Made by a program: the position numbers and the translations under genes. The notes beneath the pieces were generated by a model. That model was not told the origin of the DNA. It saw nothing but the letters and a program-made list of their open reading frames with translations, and did no database searches. A stretch of DNA of 64,000 bases from Neoechinorhynchus agilis. Taxonomy: Eukaryota > Animalia > Acanthocephala. This document shows, in pieces, positions 4,394-29,430 of this stretch. Within the stretch, counting starts at the first letter, position 1; each line of letters begins with the position of its first letter. The stretch covers positions 1,522,797 through 1,586,796 of the forward strand of contig CM121342.1 in the NCBI GenBank assembly GCA_051530055.1, in the 5' to 3' direction.

Positions 4394-4663
4394 TTAGAGA
4401 TATTTAGCTATCGTGGTTAAAATAAAATCCAGCACATAATCAAACATTGTTTGAGCTCTTAGTCGCTTCTCGCTGAAGTAATACAAAATTTTAAAATGAA
4501 GGTAAAGACATGCCAGTGGATCTGTCACGAGTTTAGGCCGAAATCGGACTAGTGAATGGTGTACGGAGTCGACTGCTTTCAATAAGTCCATTTGAATGAG
4601 ACAAGTGATGTGAGATGGTGCAGTTTTTTGTAGAGAAGTGAAAGACGACGAGTTTTGAAGCAT
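4394..4663 (-). mobile_element. Possible highly decayed non-LTR reverse-transcriptase relic
   Basis: CLIQMDLLKAVDSVHHSL resembles the RT motif hhxhDhxKAFDxVxH; nothing else is convincing. Confidence 0.3.
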
Positions 4664-6859
4664 TCTTCGATGATTTAAAAAGAACGGATGGAATGCATAA
4701 TGGGTGGATTCTGGAATGATTCATCTGTCGAAGCGACGATCAATAACAAGATATCGATAAACGAAGCTTTTATGGAATAGTTTTTAATGGATGACAAGGA
4801 TTTAGAAATTATAACATTACATGTAGATAGAGTGAACGTCGAGGATAAAGGCATGAACTTCCTTATAAAGTCATTAGTAAACAGTAACGTAGAGATTCAA
4901 GTGGTCTCCATTACAGAAAAACTTTGCCATCGCAAAAGATTATCTGTAGCGAGAGGTCAATTTGATTGTGCCACCAAAAATCGTGCAACGATCAACATTT
5001 TCGACTGGATGTATCCGTACTTTCGTCAAATAATCAATGCGTGGAACACTGATTATCGCAATTCAGTCATAAAATCATCTTATACTACAAAATTAGTACA
5101 TTGAACAAATTCAAAACCATAGTTTTAGGAACACCAGCTTTCAGAAGCTTCCTTACGCTTTAAAACATGATCATGAATTTGCTATAGACTATGTATGGAC
5201 GTGTTAATTTTAATAGCATGAATCATTCCACCTTTATTTTGGTCACGTAACTTTATAACTGAATCAATATGATATTCTTAAGCAATATGCCTCTTTAAGT
5301 AATCAAGATTCTATTAATCCCACTTTTTTCCCATTGCTAAGCTTCACTGCTGCTCTTTCGCTGGAAAAAGAGAGTGCTAACAACTTCGTCATTGTCTTTG
5401 AAGATATTAATATCTCAAAGTTTTATTGTCTGCTTTATTGATGATGATGTAGTTTCTATTTCCTTAACTTCTGAAGGAAGCACTTATTTAAATGTTGAAC
5501 ACATAGTTAAGGAGGATTTATTACGGATGAGTCAGAAAATGTACGTTGCTGAATTAGTTACTATAGAAGATAAGAGTGCAGAAACCACGAAGAACAAAAG
5601 AAAGGAGAGAAACGTATTTAAGGCAAAAAGATATTAGAGTTGTAGCACGATGAATGATGAATTGAGAAGCGTAAGAAGTTTTTGCTGCTGCGCGGTTCCT
5701 CAAGGTTAACTCCCGGAGGAAAATCTGAAATGTTACAATCACCTATTAGTTTCGTTGTATAATGGTTCCTTTAAGTTCTATCTTCCTCTTAAGCTATTCC
5801 GATTCATCTCGCCAAAAGCATACAAGATTATCTTGATACCTGAGGTACTTCATCCGGTGGCTTGTATTATCCCCTCTCAAAATAAAAGGTGCTATCATTA
5901 ATCTCCCCCATTTCCAATCGATATTGATTATAAACCAATAAGTCCAATCAACTGAATTTCACTGCCAATATTTCCCTTTGTAGATGATCCGGAACGTAAT
6001 AATTTTGCATGTCCGCAAATGTAACATTAACTTCTTTTGACTAAAATGATAATATTTCAGGATCCTTCCATTGCTTTGCACAAATCAAGACGCTTTTCGA
6101 CAGTTTATCTGACGCACGGATAAGAAAATTAGAACATCACCATCGATAATCGCTTTTTTGTTGATCACCATCACAAATAGATTCGATTACCAGTTGATTT
6201 GATGTTGGGTCAATGGCTAAAACTTCTTAAATTTAGAGCAAATTACCATCGGAATTCCAAATCTAAAATTTTCGGGGATAACACCCAGTACCTTTTTCCT
6301 GCAAAATTTCCGTCTTTCTGCGTCATAATTTGAACATTGTGAGGGTCGAACTATTACGCCTGAAATTTTAATGAAATCGATCTTTGCGAAAAATTTTTAT
6401 TGACATTTATAACTTTATCTCTAGAAATAAAAAGCAAATTCCTAACATGACTGAAAGACTAAAATCACATTCAATCCGTTGAATCGATTTTTCTTATGAG
6501 CTCACATTTGTTTTCTCTAATCATGAAGACATTGACCAATTTTTAATTATTTACTTAATAGCCATTTGAATGTTGTCACACATTTATAAACTTACAAGCA
6601 ATAATTGACTGAAGAAGTACAGCGTGACCAGACGAAATATTTCAATTAAAGTGATTCTTGGATATATAATTTTTCTCCATGACAATTTTTTATTATCAAC
6701 GAGTCATTTAAAATGTGACCGGCTCATCTTGGATATTAAATCACTGTTATGCGAATTGTCTGATCAATCAAACGAAGCTGCTACTGGTGAGTTATTGAAA
6801 GTTGCTAATAATAAAATTCTATAATTCAAGTTTAGCCACCAGGAATGCAAAAAGACAAA

Positions 6860-8330: not shown

Positions 8331-11300
8331 GCACAATGGGCTAATCAACAATGTTGGTTTGTACAATGAACAGGAAGTATTTTGCAGATACGAAAGGGGT
8401 TGGCGTTGATTAGCGAATAAAACAAGTTGGTTTCAATCATGACAGTTAGCTTCCGCGCAATATCAACATTTAGGAGAATCGAAGATGAATTGACGGATCG
8501 GAAGGAGGATATGGTTTTCCGACCAAGACGAATCACGCGAGTACGATCGAAACCCGTCTTCCTTTAAACAAAGAAGGGGGAACGAATGTAGTAGATATCT
8601 TATGGCGCACAATGGGCTAATCAACAATGTTGGTTTGTACAATGAACAGGAAGTATTTTGCAGATACGAAAGGGGTTGGCGTTGATTAGCGAATAAAACA
8701 AGTTGGTTTCAATCATGACAGTTAGCTTCCGCGCAATATCAACATTTAGGAGAATCGAGTAGAACATAATGAAGATGAATTGACGGATCGGAAGGAGGAT
8801 ATGGTTTTCCGACCAAGACGAATCACGCAGGTACGATCGAAACCCGTCTTCCTTTAAACAAGAAGGGGGAACGAGTGTAGTAGATATCTTATGGCGCACA
8901 ATGGGCTAATCAACAATGTTGGTTTGTACAATGAACAGGAAGTATTTTGCAGATACGAAAGGGGTTGGCGTTGATTAGCGAATAAAACAAGTTGGTTTCA
9001 ATCATGACAGTTAGCTTCCGCGCAATATCCACATTTAGGAGAATCGAGGTAGAACATAATGAAGATGAATTGACGGATCGGAAGGAGGATATGGTTTTCC
9101 GACCAAGACGAATCACGCGAGTACGATCGAAACCCGTCTTCCTTTAAACAAAGAAGGGGGAACGAATGTAGTAGATATCTTATGGCGCACAATGGGCTAA
9201 TCAACAATGTTGGTTTGTACAATGAACAGGAAGTATTTTGCAGATACGAAAGGGGTTGGCGTTGATTAGCGAATAAAACAAGTTGGTTTCAATCATGACA
9301 GTTAGCTTCAGCGCAATATCAACATTTAGGAGAATCGAGTAGAACATAATGAAGATGAATTGACGGATCGGAAGGAGGATATGGTTTTCCGACCAAGACG
9401 AATCACGCGAGTACGATCGGAACCCGTCTTCCTTTAAACAAAGAAGGGGGAACGAATGTAGTAGATATCCTATGGCGCACAATGGGCTAATCAACAATGT
9501 TGGTTTGTACAATGAACAGGAAGAATTTTGCAGATACGAAAGGGGTTGGCGTAATTAGCGAATAAAACAAGTTGGTTTCAATCATGACAGTTAGCTTCCG
9601 CGCAATATCAACATTTAGGAGAATCGAGTAGAACATAATGAAGATGAATTGACGGATCGGAAGGAGGATATGGTTTTCCGACCAAGACGAATCACGCGAG
9701 TACGATCGAAACCCGTCTTCCTTTAAACAAAGAAGGGGGAACGAGTGTAGTAGATATCTTATGGCGCACAATGGGCTAATCAACAATGTTGGTTTGTACA
9801 ATGAACAGGAAGTATTTTGCAGATACGAAAGGGGTTGGCGTTGATTAGCGAATAAAACAAGTTGGTTTCAATCATGACAGTTAGCTTCCGCGCAATATCA
9901 ACATTTAGGAGAATCGAGTAGAACATAATGAAGATGAATTGACGGATCGGAAGGAGGATATGGTTTTCCGACCAAGACGAATCACGCGAGTACGATCGAA
10001 ACCCGTCTTCCTTTAAACAAAGAAGGGGGAACAGATGTAGTAGATATCTTATGGCGCACAATGGGCTAATCAACAATGTTGGTTTGTACAATGAACAGGA
10101 AGTATTTTGCAGATACGAAAGGGTTTGCGTTGATTAGCAGATAAAACAAGTTGGTTTCAATCATGACAGTTAGCTTCCGCGCAATATCAACATTTAGGAG
10201 AATCGAGTAGAACATAATGAAGATGAATTGACGGATCATAAGGAGGGTATGGTTTTCCGACCAAGACGAATCACGCGAGTACGATCGAAACCCGTCAGAC
10301 CGTACGATGTCTTCCTTTAAACAAAGAAGGGGGAACGAATGTAGTAGATATCTTATGGCGCACAATGGGCTAATCAACAATGTTGGTTTGTACTTTGAAC
10401 AGAAAGTATTTTGCAGATACGAAAGGGGTTGGCGTTGATTAGCGAATAAAACAAGTTGGTTTCAATCATGACAGTTAGCTTCCGCGCAATATCAAAATTT
10501 AGGAGAATCGAGTAGAACATAATGAAGATGAATTGACGGATCGGAAGGAGGATATGGTTTTCCGACCAAGACGAATCACGCGAGTACGATCGAAACCCGT
10601 CTTCCTTTAAACAAAGAAGGGGGAACGAATGTAGTAGATATCTTATGGCGCACAATGGGCTAATCAACAATGTTGGTTTGTACAACGAACAGGAAGTATT
10701 TTGCAGATACGAAAGGGGTTGGCGTTGATTAGCGAATAAAACAAGTTGGTTTCAATCATGACAGTTAGCTTCCGCGCAATATCAACATTTAGGAGAATCG
10801 AGTAGAACATAATGAAGATGAATTGACGGGATCGGAAGGAGGATATGTTTTTCCGACCAAGACGAATCACGCGAGTACGATCGAAACCCGTCTTCCTTTA
10901 AACAAAGAAGGAGGAACGAATGTAGTAGATCTTATGGCGCACAATGGGCTAATCAACAATGTTGGTTTGTACAATGAACAGGAAGTATTTTGCAGATACG
11001 AAAGGGGTTGGCGTTGATTAGCGAATAAAACAAGGTGGTTTCAATCATGACAGTTAGCTTCCGCGCAATATCAACATTTAGGAGAATCGAGTAGAACATA
11101 ATGAAGATGAATTGACGGATCATAAGGAGGATATGGTTTTCCGACCAAGACGATTCACGCGATTACGATCGAAACCCGTCTTCCTTTAAACAAAGAAGGG
11201 GGAACGAATGTAGTAGATATCTTATGGCGCACAATGGGCTAATCAACAATGTTGGTTTGTACAATGAACAGGAAGTATTTTGCAGATACGAAAGGGGTTG

Positions 11301-13981
11301 CCGTTGATTAGCGAATAAAACAGGTTGGTTTCAATCATGACAGTTAGCTTCCGCGCAATATCAATATTTAGGAGAATCGAGTTGAACATAATGAAGATGA
11401 ATTGACGGATCGGAAGGAGGATATGGTTTTCCGACCAAGACGAATCACGCGAGTACGATCGAAACCCGTCTTCCTTTAAACAAGGAAGGGGGAACGAATG
11501 TCGTAGATATCTTATGGCGCACAATGGGCTAATCAACAATGTTGGTTTGTACAATGAACAGGAAGTATTTTGCAGATACGAAAGGGGTTGGCGTTGATTA
11601 GCGAATAAAACAAGTTGGTTTCAATTGACAGTTAGCTTCCGCGTAATATCAACATTTAGGAGAATCAGTAGAACATAATGAAGATGAATTGACGGATCGG
11701 AAGGAGGATATGGTTTTCCGACCAAGACGAATCACGCGAGTACGATCGAAACCCGTCAGACCGTACGATGTCTTCCTTTAAACAACGAAGGGGGAACGAA
11801 TGTAGTAGATATCTTATGGCGCACAATGGGCTAATCAACAATGTTGGTTTGTACAATGAACAGGAAGTATTTTGCAGATACGAAAGGGGTTGGCGTTGAT
11901 TAGCGAATAAAACAAGTTGGTTTCAATCATGACAGTTAGCTTCCGCGCAATATCAACATTTAAGAGAATCGAGTAGAACATAATGAAGATGAATTGACGG
12001 ATCGGAAGGAGGATATGGTTTTCCGACCAAGACGAATCACGCGAGTACGATCGAAACCCGTCTTCCTTTAAACAAAGAAGGGGGAACGAATGTAGTAGAT
12101 ATCTTATGGCGCACAATGGGCTAATCAACAATGTTGGTTTGTACAATGAACAGGAAGTATTTATCAGATACGAAAGGGGTTGGCGTTGATTAGCGAATAA
12201 AACAAGTTGGTTTCAATCATGACAGTTAGCTTCCGCGCAATATCAACACTTAAGAGAATCGAGTAGAACATAATGAAGATGAATTGACGGATCGGAAGGA
12301 GGATATGGTTTTCCGACCAAGACGAATCACGCGAGTACGATCGAAACCCGTCTTCCTTTAAACAAAGAAGGGGGAACGAATGTAGTAGATATCTTATGGC
12401 GCACAATGGGCTAATCAACAATGTTGGTTTGTACAATGAACAGGAAGTATTTTGCAGATACGAAAGGGGTTGGCGTTGATTAGCGAATAAAACAAGTTGG
12501 TTTCAATCATGACAGTTAGCTTCCGCGCAATATCAACATTTAGGAGAATCGAGTAGAACATAATGAAGATGAATTGACGGATCGGAAGGAGGATATGGTT
12601 TTCCGACCAAGACGAATCACGCGAGTACGATCGAAACCCGTCTTCCTTTAAACAAAGAAGGGGGAACGAATGTAGTAGATATCTTATGGCGCACAATGGG
12701 CTAATCAACAATGTTGGTTTGTACAATGAACAGGAAGTATTTTGCAGATACGAAAGGGGTTGGCGTGATTAGCGAATAAAACAAGTTGGTTTCAATCATG
12801 ACAGTTAGCTTCCGCGCAATATCAACATTAGCGAAGATAAAACAAATCAATCAACATCCGCGAACAGGAAGTATTTTATCAACGGAGAATCGAGTAGAAC
12901 ATAATGAAGATGAATTGACGGATCGGAAGGAGGATATGGTTTTCCGACCAAGACGAATCACGCGAGTACGATCGAAACCCGTCAGACCGTCGATGTCTTC
13001 CTTTAAACAAAGAAGGGGGAACGAATGTAGTAGATATCTTATGGCGCACAATGGGCTAATCAACAATGTTGGTTTGTACAATGAACAGGAAGTATTTTGC
13101 AGATACGAAAGGGGTTGGCGTTGATTAGCGAATAAAACAAGTTGGTTTCAATCATGACAGTTAGCTTCCGCGCAATATCAACATTTAGGAGAATCGAGTA
13201 GAACATAATGAAGATGAATTGACGGATCGGAAGGAGGATATGGTTTTCCGACCAAGACGAATCACGCGAGTACGATCGAAACCCGTCTTCCTTTAAACAA
13301 AGAAGGGGGAACGAATGTAGTAGATATCTTATGGCGCACAATGGGCTAATCAACAATGTTGGTTTGTACAATGAACAGGAAGTATTTTGCAGATACGAAA
13401 GGGGTTGGCGTTGATTAGCGAATAAAACAAGTTGGTTTCAATCATGACAGTTAGCTTCCGCGCAATATCAACATTTAGGAGAATCGAGTTGGGGGTAGTA
13501 TTTGTGCAGTGGCAGCGAGAAGCGAATCTCAAAGCAGTTGAATGCAGAGGACTATCAGAAACATAATCTCTAACGTGGACAGAGGCTTCCAACATAGCGA
13601 TTGAATTAGGCTGGCCTGATTTTCGAGCTTCAATGCTGAACTTTTTAGCAGTTTTTTATGCAACACCTTAGAATGCGAGTAAAATAGCTGTTAATTCAAA
13701 AAGACTTCGAGCATAAAGATTGCATGGCCACTTTTCGCATACTATTTTTTGAGATAAAAAATGACGACAAAAATTATAACTCGCGCCAAATCACTACACT
13801 GGCAGTAAATTCTTCTGTTTTTTCGTGCCTTCCAAAGCGTCGCCAACTTTCTATCGCTGCATTCGTATTCCTCTCATCGCTCTGTTTTGTTCTCTGATGA
13901 ATCGAGCGGCTTTGGAGCCGGTGGTAGATTTGTACAAAGTGGAGAGGTTTGATGTAAGTAATTTTTCTCGGAATTATTGGA
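7996..13981 (+). repeat. Left arm of a large inverted repeat (partner 23713-25608)
   Basis: 7996-8192 is the reverse complement of 25411-25608, and 13488-13981 is the reverse complement of 23713-24205. The satellite lies between these blocks in both arms. Confidence 0.9.
8193..13487 (+). repeat. ~290-bp satellite, ~18 copies; unit = Gypsy pol end + PPT + 158-bp LTR + 14 nt
   Basis: Unit starts gtagaacataatg recur about every 290 bp. Each unit contains aaagaagggggaacgaa followed by TGTAGTAGAT...AATAAA...ATCAACA (e.g. LTR 9167-9324). A 14-bp segment is present in some units (near 10287, 11757, 12984). Confidence 0.95.
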
Positions 13982-14087
13982 AGCGTCGTGTTTCCAATTT
14001 GGTTCTTAAAAATATACTGCATTATGGCCATAGTCTCGGAGTGCTTTAAATCAAACCTTTACTTAAGTAAAGTTTTGTGGTGGCTGG

Positions 14088-14172
14088 TGTCGGCATGCTT
14101 CTGCTAACGCTCTGTTTTACTCTAAGTGTCAAACCACAATGTTCAAATACGTATCGCTGACGTTCTACCACA
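14088..14172 (-). repeat. 3' LTR (85 bp) of the chimeric element
   Basis: TGTGGTAGAACG...GCATGCCGACA, immediately after the polypurine tract. Confidence 0.75.
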
Positions 14173-14418
14173 TCTCCTTCTCCTCTGCGACCCAAGTACT
14201 CGTCATAATGTCTGATGGTTTGTCTTCGTATTCGTGTCCCGCGTCTCAATTCCGTTGGTTTCGGTTCGTTTTGTTCCCCGCCTATGATCCTTGGTTCTTC
14301 TTTGACCCTAGATTCATCGATTGCTCGAGTCTTGTCGCACTTATCTGGTTCTTGCTTCTCCTTGCTGATTGAGATTTCTCGTTTTCGGATATAGTCACCA
14401 TGACGTCGTGGTCTCCGG

Positions 14419-15285
14419 TTAGTATAAAAGCGTTTTATTTATGGGAAAATACAGGATCCACATGCTGAAGGTGTCTAGATGACGGATGTTGAAGGCAAGG
14501 GAGGTGGGACTTATTTTTGAAGGGGTGCTAATGTGCGATCGGAGGCTTTGTACAGGATATGGCCGATTAGGAGTCTTTCCTTGTTCTCCGGATATTAAGG
14601 AAAGATTGGGCTTGGGGGAAGAAAGATTTTTGGTAGAGGGTGGTACGAGCGAGGAAAGATGAAAAAGGTTCGGGTTACGGGTGTTTACGAAGGAAGAGTA
14701 TTTAGAGATGAATGAAGAAAATTGTGGAGGGGGGTTGAAGAAGACGGAGGGCGTTTTTGGAGAAAATGGAGTGGAGGTGGGCGTCGAGGGGAGGGAGTGA
14801 AGTCCCGCATATTCTAGCTGCTCTCTTACATGCTCGGTTACTCTTTGGCGAAGTGGCCTTTCTGTTTTGCCCACATACTTGACCAAGTGGCCACGGTCAA
14901 TCCGACACCGTTCACACCGGATCTCGTAAACCACACTGCTCTGATCGCACATCTTCCAGTCACGATCAACTGCTTGCTGACGCTCCTCGTCCATCCTCGC
15001 ACCTGCTGCGTATCTGCACATTAGGCACGACCGAGGGTATTCCTGATGATCCTCATGATGCCTCGTTCTCGTCAGCATCCTCCGCAGCGTTCTACACCCT
15101 CTGTGCACGATACGCCCATTCAATCCCGCTTGCCTGAGCAGTACTTTGACTCTCTTCGTGAACATTTCACTCACGTACGGAATTCGTAGGATCGGCCTAT
15201 CGTCCTTTCGTACACTCATGGGTCCAACGTTCCGTCTAATTCTATTTTCCACTTCTCGCTGGAACCCCTCGATCTCCTCTGTCGA
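14419..15285 (-). pseudogene. Penelope-like linker + N-terminal half of GIY-YIG endonuclease, then a Pro/Ser-rich tail
   Basis: LRIPYVSE linker, CxxC, and VVYEIRCERC...YVGKTERPLRQRVTEH. In frame with the 962-aa ORF across a single TAA at 15286-15288 (NG*ST where NGY is typical). The C-terminal Glu/Asn part of GIY-YIG was not found. Confidence 0.85.
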
Positions 15286-18174
15286 TTATCCGTTGTCCGC
15301 GAAGATCTTGTTTACTGCTTCCACCGCTCCACGCTTCGCTTCCAACGACGATGAGCAGGTGGTTGCCGATTTATGCATACCAGCGTATATCGCCGCTTTC
15401 ATCGCCCAAAGATGGTGAGAATCTCGGTGCATCACAATCGACTTCCTGCATGGCTTTCGATACCAATTAAAGTTGGATACATCGTCGGATTTGAAGCGGA
15501 GATTGAGGAATGGCAGGTAGTCCGAAGGTTGGTCTCTCGTAACCCGAATCCTGCTATTCGAGTCCATTGAATTTAATAGTGACTCAATGGTATCGACCTC
15601 ATCATCCTCGGTGAAGGTCAGCAACACATGGTCAAAATCAACATCCACCACTGTATTTGGAAGCATGGCGACGTGAGCACGGGCTCTTGAAATGATCGCC
15701 GTCTTAAGTTGAGCCTCACTTGAAATACCGTGGCAAGCACTGATCATGCCCATCATCAATGGATCATTGACATAAGTCAAATAGCGTTCCAGTCTCAGTA
15801 CTGTACCAGACGTCCTGACCAGTAAATCGTCTGGAACATCCTTCTGCCGCTTCACAACTATGTAGTCTTCTGTTTTGATCGGCCGTAATGCTGATATCAT
15901 TGCAAATACATTCGGGGTCGCAATTGCGGACGTCTTCCAGAGTGTATTGAATGATTCGGAAACTAATGCGTGTTCATTTTCTGTCACCTCATTGACGTAG
16001 GCCGATATGGCTAGTGATTCCACTATCCGAGCCGCTGATATATTGACCGAACTTTGATATTGGCCATGCGGGGATAGGTATGGCAGGAGATTTGGCACTC
16101 CGGGAAGATACTTCAAAGTCACGAATGACGAGCCGTATCTCTCGATGACGTGCAGGTCTCTTTGTGTAGATTCGAGACGCTGAGTTATAGATTGGGTGGC
16201 CTTCTTGCTAACTTTTGCCGCTTGGATGTTCATTTCTGTTTTCTGAAGCATTCTTCTAAACATGCTTCTACCTCTACCTCTTGATGGACCGGTGTATGGG
16301 GGTGGACCTGATAGATTCCGATATTCATCCGATTCCATGAATCTCGCATTTCTCATCCCTCGATAAGCGTCGAGTCGTCGCTGTCTTGTCCTCTCGTAGC
16401 CTGGGTGATGATAATCGTTTGGATATTCCATCGCATAGCTCGAGTAGTAGAACTGTAAATGTGTGTTAGCACAATATGTGCTTGATTTGATGCTCTCTGC
16501 AGAAGTTTTGGAATCAGAGGCGATCGAATGTGGCACTCCAAATCGTGCAAACCACTCCTTGAGTTTCACTATAACGCTCCTGGTCGTCGTTTCTTTTTCC
16601 ATCTTCCACGCCTCTGGCCACTTTGTGCAAGCATTGACACACACTGAAGCACGCCCCGATCCGCGTCCCGCACGCTGTCGTGTGCGCGTTCTGCTGCCAC
16701 GCCTGCTCGGGAGAGTTGATCCCCGAGAAGCGCTCCTCGAAGCTGCAATTCTGGGTGATCTCCGCCGTGCCACCTCCAGGGGTGGGGGCTCCTCCGCAGC
16801 AGCGGTCTGCGATTCCTGGGGGACGGTCTCGACCGCGGAAGAAGCCCCAGGCTGAAAACCCGCTGGCTCCCCCGCTTGTGTCACTGCGCCTAGAAGATCC
16901 TCACCTGCCTTCTGCAGTTCAGGTGTCAGGAGGCCCAACTCAGCCAAGCGCTTATCCATATTCACTAGCCGCAATTTGAGCGCGTCCACGAGGCCGCCCA
17001 TGCCTGCAGTCAACTTTTCCATCTCCTCAGGGGATAGCACACTGGCCTTCATGGTGAGGCTAGATATCAACGCTTCTCTGGAAAGCGCCTCCAGTGCTTC
17101 TCGCTCCTCCTGTGGAACTGTTTTAATCGCTATCTCCGCCATCATGTTTTCGGCCTTTAGTGCCGCACGTCTTGCATTCCTGGGATATTCCGCTATAGAG
17201 CCCGGGTTGTGGTTGAGCAACCACGTGAGAATGGAGCGCCCGCCAGAGAGCGTGTCCACGCATTCCTGCTGATTCGGTGCCCTGGCCACCGTCCATTTTG
17301 CGCATTTCTTCTTGTTCTCCTTCCCCCAACAATGCCAATCCGTGAAGTCTAATGCCGGACAATGCTCCAGTGCCATTGCAGCACCCTCAAGCGCTCGCAC
17401 TGCCTGCTCGTTCAGTCGTGTCTGATGTGCATTTGGGTCATTCCACCTGACGTTCCTAAGACAATTAGCCATGAGGCGGGCTGCCGCGGGTCGCTGATCA
17501 TAAGGCACCGGTTTGAGCAATTTCGTCCAATTCGAACCATGAAAATGCTCCATTATAGCTACCTCCGCTGAGGTCTTGGCTGAATCCACGAAGGCCGTGG
17601 TTCCCCTGGCGCGCATTGCGTCGCGGAACATGATCACACAGGACTTGTCTATTCCGGGGCAGTCCTCAAGCTTGTCCAGCTGCACCCGCGAGAACAGGGA
17701 CAAGTTTTCCATAGCCTCACTTGAACGCCCGATATCTTGCATTCCGCCCGGTGCCACCACTTGCTTGGGGGGGGACTCGAATAGAACGGACGAGTCGTCC
17801 GGATCATCGAGGGCCTCGTACTCGTCAGTGAGTTCTGAGAGCAGTTCCTTTTCCCACCTACTCTGTGGGGTTTGCCCCTCTTTCGATTCATGAGTGACCG
17901 CCTGTTCACTCAGAAATCCACTCCTCCATGCTAGGCTCGTCGCGTCGTTGCTCCCGTCCAGAACTGGAACCCTGCCCAGGTCGCGGCCGCTTGCTGGGAG
18001 GGTCCACATCACTCGCAGACCTGGGAAGCCCCTTCTTGCCAGCTGCCGGTGGAGGGCCGGGTGGACTGTTCCCCTCATCTCTTCCGTCGCCCGGCCTGGC
18101 AACGAAGAAGTCATCTGGGGGGCCACGGTATTCCCAATCATCGGGATTGACATCCCGGCCAAGGACCTCATCAC
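15286..18174 (-). CDS. 962-codon chimeric ORF: unknown helical domain, R/S-rich linker, Gypsy integrase fragment, degenerate Penelope-like RT and thumb
   Basis: Integrase-like NACTKWPEAW...TTRSVIVKLKEWFARFGVPHSIASD. PLE-like LLNSMDSNSRIRVTRDQPSDYLPFLNL and WYRKPCRKSIVMHRDSHH...KIFADNG. The true start is probably upstream via a frameshift near 17910. Confidence 0.75.
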   Translation of the reverse strand: MMRSLAGMSIPMIGNTVAPQMTSSLPGRATEEMRGTVHPALHRQLARRGFPGLRVMWTLPASGRDLGRVPVLDGSNDATSLAWRSGFLSEQAVTHESKEGQTPQSRWEKELLSELTDEYEALDDPDDSSVLFESPPKQVVAPGGMQDIGRSSEAMENLSLFSRVQLDKLEDCPGIDKSCVIMFRDAMRARGTTAFVDSAKTSAEVAIMEHFHGSNWTKLLKPVPYDQRPAAARLMANCLRNVRWNDPNAHQTRLNEQAVRALEGAAMALEHCPALDFTDWHCWGKENKKKCAKWTVARAPNQQECVDTLSGGRSILTWLLNHNPGSIAEYPRNARRAALKAENMMAEIAIKTVPQEEREALEALSREALISSLTMKASVLSPEEMEKLTAGMGGLVDALKLRLVNMDKRLAELGLLTPELQKAGEDLLGAVTQAGEPAGFQPGASSAVETVPQESQTAAAEEPPPLEVARRRSPRIAASRSASRGSTLPSRRGSRTRTRQRAGRGSGRASVCVNACTKWPEAWKMEKETTTRSVIVKLKEWFARFGVPHSIASDSKTSAESIKSSTYCANTHLQFYYSSYAMEYPNDYHHPGYERTRQRRLDAYRGMRNARFMESDEYRNLSGPPPYTGPSRGRGRSMFRRMLQKTEMNIQAAKVSKKATQSITQRLESTQRDLHVIERYGSSFVTLKYLPGVPNLLPYLSPHGQYQSSVNISAARIVESLAISAYVNEVTENEHALVSESFNTLWKTSAIATPNVFAMISALRPIKTEDYIVVKRQKDVPDDLLVRTSGTVLRLERYLTYVNDPLMMGMISACHGISSEAQLKTAIISRARAHVAMLPNTVVDVDFDHVLLTFTEDDEVDTIESLLNSMDSNSRIRVTRDQPSDYLPFLNLRFKSDDVSNFNWYRKPCRKSIVMHRDSHHLWAMKAAIYAGMHKSATTCSSSLEAKRGAVEAVNKIFADNG

Positions 18175-19162
18175 CCACCGTGACCCACTTTTCTCCAGAA
18201 CCTAACCTCTTGAAGTACTTTAATAATGTCGAGAGGAGTCCTAAGTTTGGTAGTTTTACCATCAATCTGTCGGCGTACCCATGGTCAACGAAAGTATTGG
18301 GCAGATAGGGCACGAAGTGTTACCAATACGAACGGAATCTCGCATGTACCACTGGCCGGAGTTGAGTCTCACCGGTCACCCCGTTCGTGCGCCTGAACTT
18401 CACCTCCTGGCCAATAGCCTGAGCTACGAGAGAAGCTAGTTGGGGGCTCCCTTGACCCAGTGAGGTTGCTGGCACCCAGCGCCGTTCAAATTTGTCCGGC
18501 TCTGGCACGTTCACCCCTGCGAATATCAAATATGCCGACGAGTATTGCGGCACAGCAAAGCCTACCATGGCCGAGAGATGCCATGGGAGATAAGCGTTCC
18601 AATTGCCGCAGTCCACCGCCTGCTGGGCCACTGTCCGCAACGAGCGCAGGAGATGGAGTCCGGGTAGAGCATTTTCCCAGCCAGCGCGCTTACAAAGTTC
18701 AGAGGCCACTCGCGGGACAACGTTCCCCTGAGAACAATTGTAGTCTCTTAGTAAGAGTGGGTTCAAGAACCTCTCGCCCATCCCAAGCGTGATGTGAAGG
18801 TACCCGCTGCACTGCTGCCTCCCCATAAGCCGAAGAGACGAGAATGTGCCGAAGCACCGCTTCTCTAAACAATGCCGACGAGTCTGGAGTCGAGGTACTC
18901 TCCCCTAGTTCAATTCCCTCCATGAGGGGGCCTAAACCTAGCGCCCGCAGGTCTGAGGGTGGCAGGCGCTGCACATAGTCGTTTACACCTCGGTAAAACG
19001 GCTTCCCCTCAATTCGTATAGCATCAAAGAACACAGTTCGCACTATATTATCAAAAAGGTCGAACCAACCGTAGAAGTGACATAATCTGGAGTAAATATC
19101 CCAGAGTACTGCCGAAGGGAGTTGCAGGTCCTCGACGTCCTGATCCACGTCGAGGTTCCGGT
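17906..19162 (-). pseudogene. Upstream coding segment of the chimeric element (three ORF pieces, unknown protein)
   Basis: ORFs 18699-19205, 18320-18826 and 17906-18313 tile the region. The last two are in frame across one TAA (SYW*HFVPYL). Confidence 0.55.
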
Positions 19163-19277
19163 TGTAGGCATGCCTCTGCTCACTCTGTTTTATTCTAAGT
19201 GTCAAACCACCATGTTCAAACGTTCATGCACTTCACACTATCGATCGTACTATGCGTATCGCTAACGTCCTATCACA
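19163..19277 (-). repeat. 5' LTR (115 bp) of the chimeric element
   Basis: TGTGATAGGACG...AGAATAAAACAG...GCATGCCTACA; contains AATAAA. Confidence 0.75.
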
Positions 19278-19699
19278 GTGCCTATTGAATACTAGCTGCC
19301 AATCGCTACAGAATCAGACTTCTCGCCACCGTCCGCTAAGCGTTCACCAGTACACGAGGCATTTGACTAAAATCTAATTCATTTAATTTTTACAAATTTA
19401 AGTTTTTTCTCAATCCAAATTTATTATAAAAATCATTTACTTAAAAACCATCTTCCAGGCAATTTCCGAGAATTCTTTATCGTTCCAGTTTTTTCAAGGA
19501 TCAAGTCTTTTTCTGCGATGTTCGAATATGTGATGTATGCATCTCAGGAATCCGAAAGAGGTCGTAGCCACATTTTCTTTTCCATTTCCAATTTTTTCAC
19601 ATGAAAGCATATATCACTTGAATTCCCTACTTGATACTTTCGTTCATGCACTGATATCCATCATTATCATAACCAATTGATTAGTAATTCGGGATCTGT

Positions 19700-21100
19700 A
19701 AGATGAGCTCTTCTACTTAAATTGCAGATTTAAATATTTAGCCAGATACAATCACCACCGTCCGAAAAATTGGAGCTTCTTTTCTTCCTCGGATGTTGCT
19801 ATCACGCTAGCAGCATTGCCTCGTTGTACTGCAAGCGAAATATTTTGTCGCAGGAATACACCTGCTCGTGCGTCGCCGGTCGTTTCTCTCAATTTCTTCG
19901 AGAGATCCTGGAGCAGAGTGAGTGCCAAGCTGCCGAGCGCTCCATACGTCTCTACCCGGAAGGGGACAAAATAGTGGACCCTTGCTAAATCCCTATATTT
20001 TCGTACCTTCCTCCGTTCCGCTGCACCTCCAGAGATTTCGAGAGAGTAGGGAATGTTGCTTACTGCGAGGGTGTCCACACACGTGGCGTCCCAGAGAAGG
20101 TATTTGCACTCCCGTCAAGGAAAGACCGAAATTCCGTCAGGTTCTAGTCGACAAAGATGGGCGGGTTCCAAGATGTTGGGGAAGTTCGCCGTTCTCAAGA
20201 CGCGAGAAATTATACTATTGATCTCAGAATGGCATGCGAACCTTCCTCCTGACTTTCGGCAAACGAGACCATGTGGGACGTGCATATCGGGAGACCAAGT
20301 CTTAAGGACACTGCGATCCTCGTTACCTCATCATAGAGAAGAGTTTCCGCAGATGCCAGAAGAACAGCCTCCAATCAAGCCCCAATTCTCGTGTCAAAAC
20401 TGCAAACAATCTACCTCGGACGACCCCATCGCGAAAACCTGAAAGTAGAGAGCTGTGAGCTCTTGCGACAAGAGGTCCGTCCCAGATCGACTGTTTGGGG
20501 CCATTCACGGGAACATAGTTAGCGTCTGTCTGCTGGCACCATTCTTCAACTGCCACCACAAAGTCTTGGTCAAGACAAAACTTTTCCCTCAGAATTTTCT
20601 TCGCTATTGGTCGACTCCCCTCATACGATCCAAGAATGGCTGGCAGGGCAAGGTCTAATAGCGCCCGAATATCCAATCCCCCAAATGATATGGGAAATGA
20701 AGCTTATTGCCACGCCTCATCTGAGAGCTGGACATTTAAAATACGCTCGAGACAAGCCCTCACCTCGTCGTCGAGCAAAGTCAATCCTTCCTTATGTTTG
20801 AAGAATGTTGCTGTGCGGACCTTATATAACAATTTGGGGATATAGAGTGCGTTCTTTATCAGAAATAACGCCCCGTGAGCCGAGAGAGCGCTCACTCTAT
20901 CGCACAGCAACGAAAGTTTCGGTATGATACGGCCAATCTCAGCTTCCATACTTGAATCAAAGACGCAACTACCTAGGAGGCTGAGTTGCTCTGGAGTCAC
21001 GAGTTTCAAATCACGTCCATTCTTATACCTCCTTCCCTATCTCCACAGTTCCAAGTACGCTTGCGCCATTTTCTTTTTTGCATGGCAAGCGATATATATT
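19700..21100 (-). mobile_element. 5'-truncated, frameshifted CRE-clade non-LTR retrotransposon
   Basis: Post-RT segment LLGSCVFD...LFLIKNALYIPKLLY, EP..L..DGIS.FPW..G, DTLAVS, K.RKY, VETYG and ISLAVQRGNAASV. Confidence 0.9.
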
Positions 21101-23712: not shown

Positions 23713-25608
23713 TCCAATAATTCCGAGAAAAATTACTTACATCAAACCACTCCACTTTGTACAAATCTACCACCGGCTCCAAAGCTGCTCGATTCATCAG
23801 AGAACAAAACAGAGCGATGAGAGGAATACGAATGCAGCGATAGAAAGTTGGCGACGCTTTGGAAGGCACGAAAAAACAGAAGAATTTACTGCCAGTGTAG
23901 TGATTTGGCGCGAGTTATAATTTTTGTCGTCATTTTTTATCTCAAAAAATAGTATGCGAAAAGTGGCCATGCAATCTTTATGCTCGAAGTCTTTTTGAAT
24001 TAACAGCTATTTTACTCGCATTCTAAGGTGTTGCATAAAAAACTGCTAAAAAGTTCAGCATTGAAGCTCGAAAATCAGGCCAGCCTAATTCAATCGCTAT
24101 GTTGGAAGCCTCTGTCCACGTTAGAGATTATGTTTCTGATAGTCCTCTGCATTCAACTGCTTTGAGATTCGCTTCTCGCTGCCACTGCACAAATACTACC
24201 CCCAATCGATTCTCCTAAATGTTGATATTGCGCGGAAGCTAACTGTCATGATTGAAACCAACTTGTTTTATTCGCTAATCAACGCCAACCCCTTTCGTAT
24301 CTGCAAAATACTTCCTGTTCATTGTACAAACCAACATTGTTGATTAGCCCATTGTGCGCCATAAGATATCTACTACATTCGTTCCCCCTTCTTTGTTTAA
24401 AGGAAGACGGGTTTCGATCGTAATCGCGTGATTCGTCTTGGTCGGAAAACCATATCCTCCTTCCGATCCGTCAATTCATCTTCATTATGTTCTACTCGAT
24501 TCTCCTAAATGTTGATATTGCGCGGAAGCTAACGGTCATGATTGAAACCAACTTGTTTTATTCGCTAATCAACGGCAACCCCTTTCGTATCTGCAAAATA
24601 CTTCCTGTTCATTGTACAAACCAACATTGTTGATTAGCCCATTGTGGGCCATAAGATATCTACTACATTCGTTCCCCCTTCTTTGTTTAAAGGAAGACAT
24701 CGTACGGTCTGACGGGTTTCGATCGTACTCGCGTGATTCGTCTTGGTCGGAAAACCATATCCTCCTTCCGATCCGTCAATTCATCTTCATTATGTTCTAC
24801 TCGATTCTCTTAAATGTTGATATTGCTCGGAAGCTAACTGTCATGATTGAAACCAACTTGTTTTATTCGCTAATCAACGCCAACCCCTTTCGTATCTGCA
24901 AAATACTTCCTATTCATTGTACAAACCAACATTGATTAGCCAATTGTGCGCCATAAGATATCTACTACATTCGTTCCCCCTTCTTTGTTTAAAGGAAGAC
25001 ATCGTACGGTCTGACGGGTTTCGATCGTACTCGCGTGATTCGTCTTGGTCGGAAAACCATATCCTCCTTCCGATCCGTCAATTCCATCTTCATTATGTTC
25101 TACTCGATTCTCCTAAATGTTGATATTGCGCGGAAGCTAAACATCATGATTGGAAACCAACTTGTTTTTATTCGCTAATCAACGCCAACCGCTTTCGTAT
25201 CTGCAAAATACTTCCTGATCATTGTACAAACCAACATTGTTGATTAGCCCATTGTGCGCCATAAGATATCTACTACATTCGTTCCCCCTTCTTTGTTTAA
25301 AGGAAGACATCGTACGGTCTGACGGGTTTCGATCGTACTCGCGTGATTCGTCTTGGTCGGAAAACCATATCCTCCTTCCGATCCGTCAATTCATCTTCAT
25401 TATGTTCTACTTTTGTGACCCAAGAGTTCATTCTGCTCACTAACTTCGTCCGCCCACCTTTTTCTCTTTTTTCTTTTCACTGTTCCACATGGGAATCGCG
25501 TCTTCCACTTCTTCTCCTACCTAATCTTTCAGACCTAATTGAACAGCATTTCCCAATCTCCCTGTGCTTTAAGTGGTCAGTATGAGCTTTCTTGATCTGC
25601 TGGTTCGT
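23713..25608 (-). repeat. Right arm of the large inverted repeat
   Basis: Reverse complement of the 7996-13981 arm, with fewer satellite units. Confidence 0.9.
24206..25410 (-). repeat. ~290-304-bp LTR-derived satellite, ~4 copies, inverted relative to 8193-13487
   Basis: Same unit in reverse complement; three of four units keep the 14-bp segment. Confidence 0.95.
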
Positions 25609-27649: not shown

Positions 27650-29430
27650 AATATCGTTATTACAGACCCATACGTTATGATTGTTCGGCAGCTCCGCGCT
27701 TATTCGCTGCAGCAAGAATCTGCTGGAGCGCATGTCGCCGGTGGCATGTTTCAGCATTTTTCCCAGTCAAGGAAGGAAATAATCGGCTTCTTTTCCGAGG
27801 TATCCCAGCGTTTCCACCGCAATCCGGATGAACATCTATTGATGCCCATCGAGCGAGGAGTGCTTATGCCGCTTCTTTTAATCGCTGAGGCTGGTGATTG
27901 CTACCGCTTTTGAGGTAGCATCCCGTAAATGGGATGCTGTGAGCGTGTTGGGGCAAGTAAAATCCCAAACCAGTATTTTCCCGGAGCACCAAGGGGAGAG
28001 TGTCTCCATCAGGGCGTTTACCGTCGTTCCGGGAGAGTCCAACTGGTTCGAGTCGAGCTGGAAAACCGGCCGTTGAGATGGCTTCCTTGATTATGCGGTT
28101 GACTGCTGAGTGCCGTGCGCAGCGAGCATTTGAACTCTTGCAGTCAAGGTCGTGAGTTCCCGACCTATTCACTGTCCCACCGCACCGACATGTATATGAG
28201 CCTGAGAATTCGATGCCCAACCGAAGTCCCACAGCGACGGTGATGGCTTGGTCATCCAGCCTCGTGGCAACAATCGTGACCGGGAAAACCTTCAAGAAGT
28301 CGCTTGAGTGAGGAGCTGAGACTGACAGGAGACGAACTCTATCGGTGAGAGATGAGCATGAGTTGAGAAGCTGTTGATAATACGCAGTGTGGAGCAAGGC
28401 AGTCCAACGTTTTTGGGAGTTTGTTTCCGTTGGAACGACCTGCCCGAACACTGATGTCCATTGAGCGTGCGTTTCAATCAGTTCAGGTGGTGGATACGAC
28501 TCTAGTCGAATGTGTGGTGGGATGATTCTCAGCACCAGGTCTGAAGAGACCGAGATCGACGACGAAAAGGCAGGAATTGCTACTTCGGTGGTACTCTGGA
28601 TGCCAAGACCGCCGAATCGAATGGGAAGGATCGCCTGTTTCCATGCTGTGTCGGACAGTCGTAGGTTAAGTACTTCTGACAGGGTTGATCGAACGCAGTT
28701 GTCGAAATCCCTGGTGAGCACTGACTTGAAGCATGGAGAAGTCCTCAGAAGGTACGCAATCTTCGGAAGCGACAGACATCGTGATAATATGAACAGAGCG
28801 TCGTATCGCGCGATGTGCAAGAGCCTGGAGGCAGTGAGCCGCATTTGATCGATAGCTTTTGAGAGGAACGTTTCCAGGTTGGACAGGTTACCGATTGGAG
28901 ACTCAAGAATGTCAGCTGAGTCGATTGCAGTTGTGTTTGCTCCAGGTAGTACGGTGAGCAGTCTTGATGATATCGGCACCCATTTCGGAGATGTTTTTGA
29001 TGTCGCGGATGAGTTGGTCGATCTCCCCTCCAAAGCAACAGTCGTCAAGGTACCAGATCGATAACTCTGACGAAGAGCTGTGGGCAAGATGATTGATCGT
29101 AAATGCGAACAGCAGAGGACCTAAAGGATTACCTTGTTGAACGCCCTCTGCTGATTCGACCTGGAACTCGCCGAACAGCAGCATGATGGCCTGGTCGTAG
29201 CACAATGACACGTTCTGGTAGATTTCTGGTAGGTGCTGGTGGACAACCTCTGTTATCGCGGAGCGGCATATTGAATTGAACGCACCATTCCGACTATACG
29301 CTCGTGCTGCATGTACGGCCGCCTCGGCTCCAGCAGGAACTCTGACTCCTAATTGAACCGGCAAGAGTTGATCGATCAATTGATCGGTGGCGAACTTACA
29401 CGCGGCTTTGGATGCCAACCGACGATAGGT
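27650..29430 (-). mobile_element. 5'-truncated CRE-clade retrotransposon (RT + RLE), copy A
   Basis: PVQLGV, GVQQGNPLGP, YLDD, WKQAILPIRFGGLG, CRCG..HDLDC, RHSAVN, EPVGLSRNDGKRPDG; frameshifted. Confidence 0.92.

What the first reader, a model, noticed from the sequence alone, without database searches (positions are those of the whole stretch)
14088..19277. LTR-bounded element carrying a Penelope-like RT/GIY-YIG module: candidate new hybrid retroelement
Seen: short TG...CA LTRs, a PPT and a Gypsy-type pol-end motif enclose a Penelope-type RT-thumb-linker-GIY-YIG arrangement. Established: PLEs normally lack true LTRs and a PPT, and Gypsy elements do not carry PLE RT or GIY-YIG. Inference: this may be a non-autonomous LTR vehicle that captured a PLE module and moved as a unit using Gypsy enzymes in trans. 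The simpler alternative is a one-off PLE insertion into a dead Gypsy element, but the frame staying open across the integrase-to-PLE junction argues against that.
Basis: partly seen in the sequence, partly recalled or inferred. Interest (0 to 1): 0.85.

Follow-up and report, generated by a model that had tools for sequence, protein, structure and literature searches.

The report
Virus-like genes trapped in LTR shell
This is not a new LTR/Penelope hybrid transposon but a dead, patchwork DNA copy in the thorny-headed worm Neoechinorhynchus agilis, where two short LTRs enclose probably virus-derived genes and small broken pieces of an integrase and a Penelope-like element, the kind of chimera already known from mosquitoes and a nematode.

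Summary
The window is Neoechinorhynchus agilis (Acanthocephala) chromosome CM121342.1. The terminal repeats are real: 85 and 115 bp, TG..CA, 75/83 aligned bases identical. The element's longest purine run abuts the 3' repeat.

The interior is not a Penelope-like element (PLE) inside a Gypsy. All coding is on the minus strand, as a chain of pieces:
- unit A
- unit B
- an arginine-rich linker
- a ~50-aa integrase-core fragment
- a ~800-bp internal PLE fragment
- two unassigned segments

The PLE fragment starts only at the YxDD position (here DFDH). Its GIY-YIG domain is cut after 'EH'.

A, B and C are multi-copy in N. agilis, and C also occurs in Pomphorhynchus laevis. Copies differ at dN/dS 0.04-0.07, with synonymous sites near saturation. 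At another locus an A copy lies 264 bp downstream of a nodavirus-like replicase.

There is no primer-binding site, because A abuts the 5' LTR through a microhomology. No second copy and no junction-spanning protein was found.

Best reading: a one-off LTR-retrotransposon/viral cDNA chimera made by template switching, comparable to eBxnv-1. Interest is moderate to low.

The parts
19163..19277 (-). 5' LTR-like repeat (115 bp; TGTG...TACA; contains AATAAA)
   Evidence: Direct repeat of 14088-14172. Its last bases overlap the start of unit A.
17818..19169 (-). Unit A: orphan coding unit, decayed. It has a frameshift near 18814, a TAA at 18322-18320, and a second frame change between 18201 and 17909.
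   Evidence: 84% DNA and 91-93% aa identity to L006:10091-10585. That copy lies 264 bp downstream of a nodavirus-like replicase ORF on the same strand. dN/dS is 0.04-0.05. The sharp 5' boundary is shared with L006.
16804..17817 (-). Unit B: orphan gene with its own ~75-nt leader and ATG at 17742
   Evidence: 73-76% aa identity to P0001/L003:9950-10795. Also matches P0006, P0060, L009, L010 and, distantly, a JGI metagenome protein. The sharp 5' boundary is shared with L003:9927.
16654..16803 (-). Arg/Ser-rich, GC-rich linker of unknown origin, in frame
   Evidence: No homolog in any search.
16477..16653 (-). Integrase (rve) core fragment, ~50 aa, profile positions 25-75 of 102, in frame
   Evidence: Pfam rve E=0.0014, below the cut-off. 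phmmer hits to Ty3/BEL-type integrases at 38-42% identity, E 7e-6 to 1e-3.
15622..16476 (-). Unit C: leader, ATG (16431) and the first 272 of 442 codons of an orphan, arginine-rich-N-terminus protein
   Evidence: 85% aa and 78% DNA identity to the intact gene L003:948-2276. Copies are present in L001, L002, L004, L006, in P. laevis and on a Logan contig. All copies lose homology to the window at 15622. dN/dS is 0.066.
14824..15621 (-). Internal fragment of a Penelope-like element. It has DFDH at the YxDD position, the thumb (LPFLN, WYRKP, H..S.H), a TAA at 15288-15286, the linker with CxxC, and the first half of GIY-YIG (VVYEIRC...YVGKTERPLRQRVTEHVR).
   Evidence: Alignment with N. agilis and nematode PLE proteins. 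93% DNA identity to L002:4118-4188, where the GIY-YIG ORF continues normally.
14639..14827 (-). Segment E, unassigned, pyrimidine-rich on the sense strand
   Evidence: 92% DNA identity to L004:5802-5990, an unrelated locus.
14187..14638 (-). Segment F, unassigned. It may be the 3' internal region of the LTR element that supplied the shell.
   Evidence: No match in loci or Pfam.
14173..14186 (-). Polypurine tract AGAGGAGAAGGAGA abutting the 3' LTR
14088..14172 (-). 3' LTR-like repeat (85 bp; may start at 14085)
14080..14084 (.). Possible imperfect 5-bp target-site duplication, GTGGC, paired with GTGCC at 19278-19282. It holds only if the LTR is taken to start at 14085.
   Evidence: Read. It matches 4 of 5 bases and was found post hoc, so it is weak.

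Best explanation
The region is a single, dead chimeric retro-copy.

Shell. An LTR retrotransposon supplied the outer parts: two short LTRs and a polypurine tract.

Interior. During reverse transcription the enzyme left its own RNA and copied a chain of other RNAs, all in sense orientation.
- Three of these (A, B, C) are discrete coding units, each copied up to its own 5' end. They belong to a multi-copy gene set that evolved under strong protein-level constraint and is linked elsewhere in the genome to a nodavirus-like replicase. They are therefore most likely endogenous viral elements.
- The remainder are short internal scraps: ~50 aa of a Ty3/BEL-type integrase core, ~265 aa of a PLE polyprotein, and unassigned pieces.

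Integration and decay. The product integrated once and has since decayed by two frameshifts and two stop codons.

Shown: the segment map, the shared sharp unit boundaries, the truncations, the unfused parents, the constraint among copies, and the LTR/PPT.

Inferred: viral origin of A-B-C, template switching as the joining mechanism, and integrase-mediated insertion.
For: Segment map and parents:
- The segmental homology map shows no hit crossing a junction.
- Unfused parents of C and of the PLE fragment exist.

Unit boundaries and junctions:
- The 5' ends of the units are sharp and identical to those of independent copies: A at 19169 = L006:10091, B at 17817 = L003:9927, C at 16476 = L003:900. 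This is what is expected if a reverse transcriptase ran to RNA 5' ends and then jumped.
- Short, imperfect microhomologies occur at LTR/A (TACAACC), C/PLE (around VDxD) and PLE/E (AGA).

Viral link for A, B and C:
- dN/dS is 0.04-0.07 with dS about 1 or saturated among genomic copies, so they diverged as functional genes before integration.
- In L006 the same strand carries the C 3' part, D, a replicase (Noda_Vmethyltr E=2.6e-48; RdRP_3; PDB 8fm9 E=3.5e-31) and then A.
- C units share a ~100-nt 3' UTR without poly(A).
- In L002 and L003, B copies sit directly after LTR-retrotransposon gag/PR/RT fragments on the same strand.

Shell:
- LTRs with TG..CA plus an abutting PPT.

Precedents:
- eBxnv-1, a nodavirus-like EVE inside a BEL/Pao element with 132-nt LTRs (PMC5177903).
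- Same-strand EVE-LTR association in Aedes, with template switching proposed (bioRxiv 10.1101/127498).
Against: - No viral hallmark gene lies in the window itself. A, B and C have no Pfam or PDB match. The AlphaFold model of C is poor, with pLDDT 44. The viral label therefore rests on synteny at one locus plus constraint.
- There is no clean TSD. Only a 4/5 match appears, and only at a shifted LTR boundary.
- The LTRs differ by ~10% plus a 32-bp indel. That is high for an interior with so little damage, although the confidence intervals overlap at about 2-3% per copy.
- Four or five in-frame junctions in a row are unlikely by chance (roughly 1-4%).
- Segment E may be antisense to its source.
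- Microhomology junctions could equally arise from DNA repair.
Confidence: 0.58

Rival explanations
1. DNA-level patchwork. The locus is a TE/EVE graveyard in which separate insertions, deletions and end-joining events over time put the fragments side by side. No single reverse-transcription event made the chain, and the two repeats are what is left of an older LTR element.
For: - The locus sits in a repeat-rich, rearranged region. This includes a 99.3% inverted repeat flanking it, satellite arrays, LINE fragments and common interspersed repeats.
- LTR divergence is higher than the interior decay suggests.
- There is no PBS and no clean TSD.
- Microhomology junctions are also typical of end joining.
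- Other N. agilis loci show different mixtures of the same units.
Against: - All assignable pieces are co-oriented.
- Three units begin exactly at their natural 5' ends.
- There are no leftover flanks of the supposed separate insertions.
- The frame is open over 3.8 kb, which independent old insertions and deletions would rarely give.
Confidence: 0.2
2. This is a non-autonomous LTR element family that captured a PLE RT/GIY-YIG module and is mobilised as a unit by Gypsy enzymes in trans, i.e. a new hybrid retroelement.
For: - LTRs, a PPT and a possible 5-bp TSD are present.
- A long open frame crosses the junctions.
- LTR elements with captured cargo are known, for example eBxnv-1 (PMC5177903).
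Against: - There is no PBS.
- The PLE piece lacks RT motifs 1-4 and half of the nuclease and makes up only ~15% of the interior.
- No other copy is present in the 64-kb window or in ~180 kb of other N. agilis loci that are rich in the same units.
- No junction-spanning protein is present in two protein libraries.
- The parents occur unfused.
Confidence: 0.06
3. A PLE-made structure. The repeats are pseudo-LTRs, meaning an upstream 5'-truncated copy of the element's own 3' end, produced by the tandem-forming PLE integration mechanism. A PLE reverse transcriptase made the chimera.
For: - PLEs regularly form pLTRs and have been mistaken for LTR elements (PMC8557442).
- A PLE fragment is part of the chain.
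- There is no PBS.
- The upstream repeat ends exactly at the repeat's 3' terminus.
Against: - The PLE fragment lacks its own 3' end. The same family's 3' region, in L002 after position 4434, does not match the window's tail or repeats.
- No hammerhead ribozyme or any other Rfam hit is present.
- TG..CA ends plus an abutting 14-nt PPT are unexpected for a pLTR.
Confidence: 0.05
4. The mechanism is the same as in the best explanation, but the cargo is not viral. A, B and C would be lineage-specific host genes or genes of an unrecognised mobile element, and the nodavirus-like replicase next to A in L006 would be a coincidental neighbour.
For: - A, B and C have no hit to any virus family.
- Intact, annotated C and B genes exist.
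- The replicase was seen in only one of seven loci holding these units.
- The model of C is mostly helical and of low confidence, not a recognisable capsid fold.
Against: - Packing is tight and same-strand in the order C-D-replicase-A in L006, with gaps of only 260-430 bp.
- Synonymous sites are saturated among copies within one genome, with dN/dS about 0.05.
- There is no poly(A) at C unit ends.
- Units repeatedly abut LTR-retrotransposon fragments, as EVEs do.
Confidence: 0.25

Closest known systems
eBxnv-1 of Bursaphelenchus xylophilus: a nodavirus-like EVE captured inside a BEL/Pao LTR retrotransposon (Cotton et al. 2016, PMC5177903)
   Same: Both have short LTRs (132 nt there, 85-115 nt here) and a PPT. 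Both keep integrase remnants between the LTRs and carry non-retroviral, nodavirus-related cargo plus an ORF of unknown function. Both are single or few-copy, and template switching is the proposed origin.
   Different: eBxnv-1 has identical LTRs, a PBS, and the RdRp itself inside the element. Here the LTRs differ by ~10%, there is no PBS, and the replicase is not in the element. The viral link comes only through unit A at another locus. The chain also holds a PLE fragment.
EVE-LTR retrotransposon associations and virus-retrotransposon hybrid cDNAs in insects (Aedes aegypti Aag2 genome, bioRxiv 10.1101/127498). From my own knowledge, also Flock House virus-retrotransposon chimeric DNA in Drosophila (Goic et al. 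2013) and the LCMV-IAP recombinant (Geuking et al. 2009).
   Same: Viral pieces and Ty3/BEL pieces share one strand. Fragments are mosaic, and template switching during reverse transcription is the proposed mechanism.
   Different: Those cases involve recognisable viral ORFs. A PLE piece in the chain has not, to my knowledge, been described.
Penelope-like elements with pseudo-LTRs (PMC8557442)
   Same: The thumb, linker and GIY-YIG sequence is of clear PLE type. Direct repeats flank a unit that lacks a PBS.
   Different: There is no complete RT, no complete nuclease, no PLE 3' end and no hammerhead motif. The repeats have LTR-type ends and a PPT.
Non-autonomous LTR elements (LARD/TRIM) and LTR elements carrying captured host sequence (own knowledge)
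   Same: LTRs plus a PPT enclose an interior without gag-pol.
   Different: Those families have a PBS and many copies. Neither is seen here.

Membership tests
LTR retrotransposon (autonomous Ty3/Gypsy or BEL, or non-autonomous LARD/TRIM) | Two direct LTRs with TG...CA ends | tested here: met
   14088-14172 and 19163-19277; 75/83 aligned bases identical; TGTG...ACA ends.
LTR retrotransposon (autonomous Ty3/Gypsy or BEL, or non-autonomous LARD/TRIM) | Polypurine tract directly upstream of the 3' LTR | tested here: met
   A 14-nt purine run at 14186-14173. It is the longest in the element, and such runs are rare in the window.
LTR retrotransposon (autonomous Ty3/Gypsy or BEL, or non-autonomous LARD/TRIM) | tRNA primer-binding site just after the 5' LTR | tested here: not met
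   Homology to the independent A copy (L006) starts within the last bases of the LTR, and the following bases are A coding sequence.
LTR retrotransposon (autonomous Ty3/Gypsy or BEL, or non-autonomous LARD/TRIM) | 4-6-bp target-site duplication | tested here: inconclusive
   None at the 14088/19277 boundaries (GCTGG vs GTGCC). GTGGC vs GTGCC match 4 of 5 if the LTR starts at 14085.
LTR retrotransposon (autonomous Ty3/Gypsy or BEL, or non-autonomous LARD/TRIM) | gag and pol (PR-RT-RH-IN) coding, or for non-autonomous families many copies sharing the LTRs | tested here: not met
   Only a ~50-aa rve fragment is present. No further copy of the LTR lies in the window or in ten fetched loci. A genome-wide count was not possible.
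Penelope-like element (EN+ PLE) | Complete RT with motifs 1-7 and catalytic YxDD | tested here: not met
   PLE homology starts at ORF residue ~848. DFDH stands where relatives have YADD/YIDD, and motifs 1-4 are absent.
Penelope-like element (EN+ PLE) | PLE-type thumb and linker (LPFLN, WYRKP, H..S.H, NGY, PY..., CxxC) | tested here: met
   Alignment with N. agilis and nematode PLE proteins at 29-55% identity.
Penelope-like element (EN+ PLE) | Complete C-terminal GIY-YIG endonuclease | tested here: not met
   The domain ends at 14824 after '...RVTEHVR'. The same family continues ~80 aa further in L002:4126-4434. Pfam GIY_YIG_2 gives only E=0.076.
Penelope-like element (EN+ PLE) | pLTR equal to the element's own 3' end, often with a hammerhead ribozyme | tested here: not met
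   No Rfam match in 13000-20500 at E<=1 apart from a chance miRNA hit. The tail and repeats are unrelated to the PLE 3' region in L002.
Endogenous viral element of a non-retroviral RNA virus (nodavirus-like) carried in an LTR shell | Sequence homologous to a viral hallmark gene inside the element | tested here: not met
   No RdRp or capsid family hit in the window element.
Endogenous viral element of a non-retroviral RNA virus (nodavirus-like) carried in an LTR shell | Units collinear with a viral replicase elsewhere | tested here: met
   In L006 the order is C 3' part, D, replicase (Noda_Vmethyltr E=2.6e-48; 8fm9 E=3.5e-31) and A, all on one strand. This was seen at one locus only.
Endogenous viral element of a non-retroviral RNA virus (nodavirus-like) carried in an LTR shell | Copies diverged under purifying selection before integration | tested here: met
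   dN/dS is 0.04-0.07, with dS about 1-1.5 or saturated.
Template-switch chimeric retrocopy | Co-oriented segments that end at donor RNA 5' ends, with microhomology at junctions | tested here: met
   The 5' ends of A, B and C are shared with independent copies. Microhomologies occur at three junctions. The orientation of E and F is unknown.

The most novel reading that the evidence does not exclude
A, B, C and D, together with the nodavirus-like replicase, are the gene set of an unrecognised, unusually large noda-like virus lineage of acanthocephalans. Under this reading:
- it carries orphan genes;
- it has been endogenised many times in two acanthocephalan classes;
- intact, strongly constrained copies such as the 442-aa C gene at L003:948-2276 are now expressed host genes, or an exogenous virus still circulates;
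- the window element is a snapshot of how LTR-retrotransposon particles, with PLE and other RNAs co-present, capture it.

A bolder variant is that LTR shells like this one have amplified the viral units as cargo.
Probability: 0.2. Interest if true: 0.65.

Novelty: new member of a known kind. Interest (0 to 1): 0.33.

Why it matters
The claimed novelty, an LTR/Penelope hybrid retroelement, does not hold, so nothing here changes how retroelement classes are drawn.

What remains is a detailed example of a known process: capture of foreign, probably viral, RNAs into an LTR-bounded cDNA by template switching. Three donor units are copied exactly to their 5' ends, and a PLE scrap sits in the chain.

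A by-product is that N. agilis carries a nodavirus-like replicase EVE together with a family of co-located orphan genes that is shared with Pomphorhynchus laevis. In the papers I could search, only mononegavirus-like EVEs had been noted for acanthocephalans (PMC12548735). This could guide virus discovery in these fish parasites.

Tried and rejected
Searches that gave nothing useful:
- Word-indexed protein searches with the 962-aa ORF and with a junction-centred 192-aa query returned nothing. The tool missed even 73%-identical N. agilis proteins that exhaustive phmmer found, so these negatives are weak.
- PDB sequence searches with the ORFs and with a profile of C gave no usable hit.
- Pfam on every A, B, C, D, E and F piece gave nothing beyond the weak rve and GIY-YIG hits.
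- The AlphaFold2 model of C, with 8 sequences, had pLDDT 44. I ran no fold search because it would be meaningless.
- The Rfam scan for hammerhead or other RNAs found none. No tRNA genes are in the window.
- The gene next to the metagenomic B homolog (L008) is not detectably C-like.

Ideas considered and dropped:
- Five 168-aa ORFs in the window looked like extra copies. They are unrelated LINE and host-gene duplicates.
- An early mis-assignment of BLAST hits to L002 arose because one file held three loci. It was corrected.
- Reading C as a mononegavirus nucleoprotein was dropped, because D has no L-protein signature and the gene order does not fit.

Limits:
- No tool searches eukaryotic assemblies by DNA, so the copy number of the LTR and of the junctions in the N. 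agilis genome could not be measured.

Procedural note:
- In one search I used one contiguous 10.7-kb slice of L006 as a BLAST query before I recognised it as a replicase-bearing EVE cluster. The temporary file was deleted. Later comparisons were made unit by unit.
Full report
**Source and strand**

The window ORF 30984-33029 is found, exactly, in Neoechinorhynchus agilis assembly GCA_051530055.1, chromosome CM121342.1 at 1,553,780-1,555,825. The window is therefore acanthocephalan nuclear DNA. It is repeat-rich, with LINE RTs, a 290-bp satellite and segmental duplications. Everything coding in the finding lies on the minus strand.

**The observation**

The terminal repeats are real.
- 14088-14172 and 19163-19277 align with 75/83 identical bases plus a 32-bp and a 2-bp indel.
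- They start TGTG and end ACA on the sense strand.
- The 14-nt purine run AGAGGAGAAGGAGA abuts the 3' repeat. It is the longest in the element, and only 24 such runs occur in 128 kb of both strands.
- TG..CA ends plus this tract make an LTR-retrotransposon origin of the shell likely.

Other LTR hallmarks are missing or weak.
- A clean TSD is absent. GTGGC and GTGCC match 4 of 5 only if the LTR is started at 14085.
- There is no primer-binding site. Homology to an independent copy of the first internal unit starts inside the last bases of the 5' LTR.

**The interior**

An exhaustive phmmer search of the 962-aa ORF against 1.8 billion representative proteins gave strictly segmental hits, and none crosses a junction. 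Combined with locus comparisons, the sense-strand map is:

| Part | Window coordinates (sense order) |
|---|---|
| 5' LTR | 19277-19163 |
| Unit A | 19169-17818 |
| Unit B | 17817-16804 (own ATG at 17742) |
| Arg-rich linker | 16803-16654 |
| Integrase-core fragment | 16653-16477 |
| Unit C | 16476-15622 (own ATG at 16431; 272 of 442 codons) |
| PLE fragment | 15621-14824 |
| Segment E | 14827-14639 |
| Segment F | 14638-14187 |
| PPT | 14186-14173 |
| 3' LTR | 14172-14088 |

Further copies lie in L001, L002, L004 and L006, in Pomphorhynchus laevis and on a Logan contig.

**The PLE part**

Alignment with N. agilis and nematode PLE proteins shows that homology begins only at the YxDD position.
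- The window reads DFDH where relatives have YADD or YIDD.
- RT motifs 1-4 are absent.
- The thumb and linker are typical: LPFLN, WYRKP, H..S.H, NG(Y), PY..., CxxC.
- The GIY-YIG domain stops after '...YVGKTERPLRQRVTEHVR' at 14824.
- At that point the window is 93% identical to L002:4118-4188, where the nuclease ORF runs on normally. The window instead switches to a sequence 92% identical to an unrelated place, L004:5802-5990.

The 'module' is therefore an ~800-bp internal scrap with neither a working polymerase nor a working nuclease. No hammerhead ribozyme is present.

**The integrase part**

About 50 residues match the rve profile, positions 25-75 of 102, at E=0.0014. That is below Pfam's cut-off. 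Integrases are hit at 38-42% identity. It is a fragment, not a pol end.

**What A, B and C are**

They have no family or structure match, and the model of C is poor. Four observations point to a replicating, probably viral, source.

1. Linkage to a replicase. The closest A copy (84% DNA, 91-93% aa) lies 264 bp downstream of a nodavirus-like replicase in L006. That replicase scores Noda_Vmethyltr E=2.6e-48, matches RdRP_3, and matches the RNA-dependent RNA polymerase chain of PDB 8fm9 at E=3.5e-31. The same strand there reads C 3' part, D, replicase, A.
2. Co-occurrence. A, B, C and D co-occur on one strand in five loci.
3. Constraint. Copies within this one genome differ at dN/dS 0.04-0.07, with synonymous sites at dS about 1-1.5 or saturated. 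They diverged as working genes, not as decaying pseudogenes.
4. Unit ends. C units share ~100 nt of 3' UTR without poly(A).

In L002 and L003, B copies follow LTR-retrotransposon gag/PR/RT fragments on the same strand. This is the usual company of EVEs (bioRxiv 10.1101/127498).

**How the chain was probably made**

- Each of A, B and C begins at a sharp boundary that is the same in an independent copy: 19169 = L006:10091, 17817 = L003:9927, 16476 = L003:900.
- B and C carry their own short leaders and ATGs.
- Where parents are available, junctions show short, imperfect microhomologies.
- All copies of C lose homology to the window at exactly 15622 and continue for ~160 more codons of their own.

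This pattern, co-oriented pieces each copied to a donor's 5' end and then a jump, is what template switching during reverse transcription produces. With LTRs and a PPT at the outside, the simplest source is an LTR-retrotransposon particle. The nearest precedent is eBxnv-1, a nodavirus-like EVE inside a BEL/Pao element with 132-nt LTRs (PMC5177903).

**The open frame**

Damage is light: a frameshift near 18814 relative to L006, a TAA at 18322-18320, a second frame change between 18201 and 17909, and a TAA at 15288-15286.

Simulated neutral decay gives at most one new stop in the 3.78-kb frame with these probabilities:

| Per-copy divergence | P(at most one new stop) |
|---|---|
| 1% | 0.56 |
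| 2% | 0.20 |
| 4% | 0.03 |

The ~10% LTR difference corresponds to about 5% per copy, with a 95% range of roughly 2-9%. That is somewhat high, but it overlaps the range implied by the interior at 2-3%.

The frame is thus open mainly because recently intact coding RNAs were joined. Segment E is pyrimidine-rich on the sense strand and so is poor in stop codons anyway. Three to five junctions all being in frame remains mildly surprising, at roughly 1-4% by chance, and I leave it as unexplained.

**Is it a mobile family?**

- No second copy of the LTR or of any junction occurs in the window or in ten other loci (~150 kb) that are rich in the same units.
- No protein in either library spans a junction.
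- The unit has no PBS.
- A genome-wide DNA search was not possible with the tools at hand, so copy number is the main open point.

**Verdict**

The interpretation as a hybrid retroelement is not supported. The best reading is a one-off, decayed LTR-retrotransposon/foreign-RNA chimera whose main cargo is probably an endogenous nodavirus-like gene set. That makes it a new member of a known kind. The more interesting by-product is the EVE family itself.

Noticed in passing
L006:6076-9827 (N. agilis CM121341.1:9675027-9695623): Nodavirus-like replicase EVE in two ORFs separated by one stop. It scores Noda_Vmethyltr E=2.6e-48, matches RdRP_3, and matches PDB 8fm9 at E=3.5e-31. On the same strand it is flanked by the C 3' part, orphan family D (upstream) and A (downstream). 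I found no report of noda-like EVEs in acanthocephalans in the searchable literature.
   Followed up: partly
window 12885-13981 vs 24809-23713: Inverted repeat with arms of at least 1.1 kb at 99.3% identity. The arms continue outward into 290/305-bp satellite arrays (8481-12829 and 24406-25411). The 9.7-kb spacer holds the element and a LINE 3' part. This may be a real palindrome or an assembly artefact.
   Followed up: partly
window 27694-33029 vs 41065-46400; 38239-38745 vs 56558-57064: Near-identical segmental duplications. They carry a LINE fragment, a zf-C2HC gene with internal repeats, and a CID-domain exon.
   Followed up: no
L003:948-2276: Intact 442-aa copy of orphan gene C, with ATG, stop and an Arg-rich N-terminus. 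It is annotated as a hypothetical protein and could be an expressed or domesticated EVE gene.
   Followed up: partly
L003:13877-17995, L004:9866-11536, L006:2565-5607, L010:111-548 and 5007-5414: Large orphan family 'D' (more than 1000 aa in pieces). It always lies on the same strand as A, B or C units and has no Pfam hit. In gene model P0003 it is fused to CCHC zinc knuckles and then to C.
   Followed up: partly
window 13654-14026 and 23715-24040; L002:13862-14024; L003:11735-12010 and 17987-18227; L004:15800-16083; L006:16111-16286: Common interspersed repeat of ~280-370 bp at 73-79% identity among copies, lying 60 bp from the element's 3' LTR. Its class is unknown.
   Followed up: no
window 19145-19120 (minus strand), also L006:10104-10129: A 9-bp perfect inverted repeat, CCTCGACGT...ACGTCGAGG, lies ~12 nt from the 5' end of unit A. 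It is conserved with one transition in the L006 copy and may be a terminal stem-loop of the donor RNA.
   Followed up: no
L001:12814-12979: A second PLE thumb fragment (51-60% aa to the window's) lies 1.5 kb downstream of a full C copy. This is probably coincidental in TE-rich DNA.
   Followed up: no
window 19749-21009 (minus strand): The 3' part of a CR1-like LINE ends 470 bp upstream of the 5' LTR. Copies of it at 79-86% identity also lie at 36166-37275, 53193-54456 and 54932-55595.
   Followed up: no
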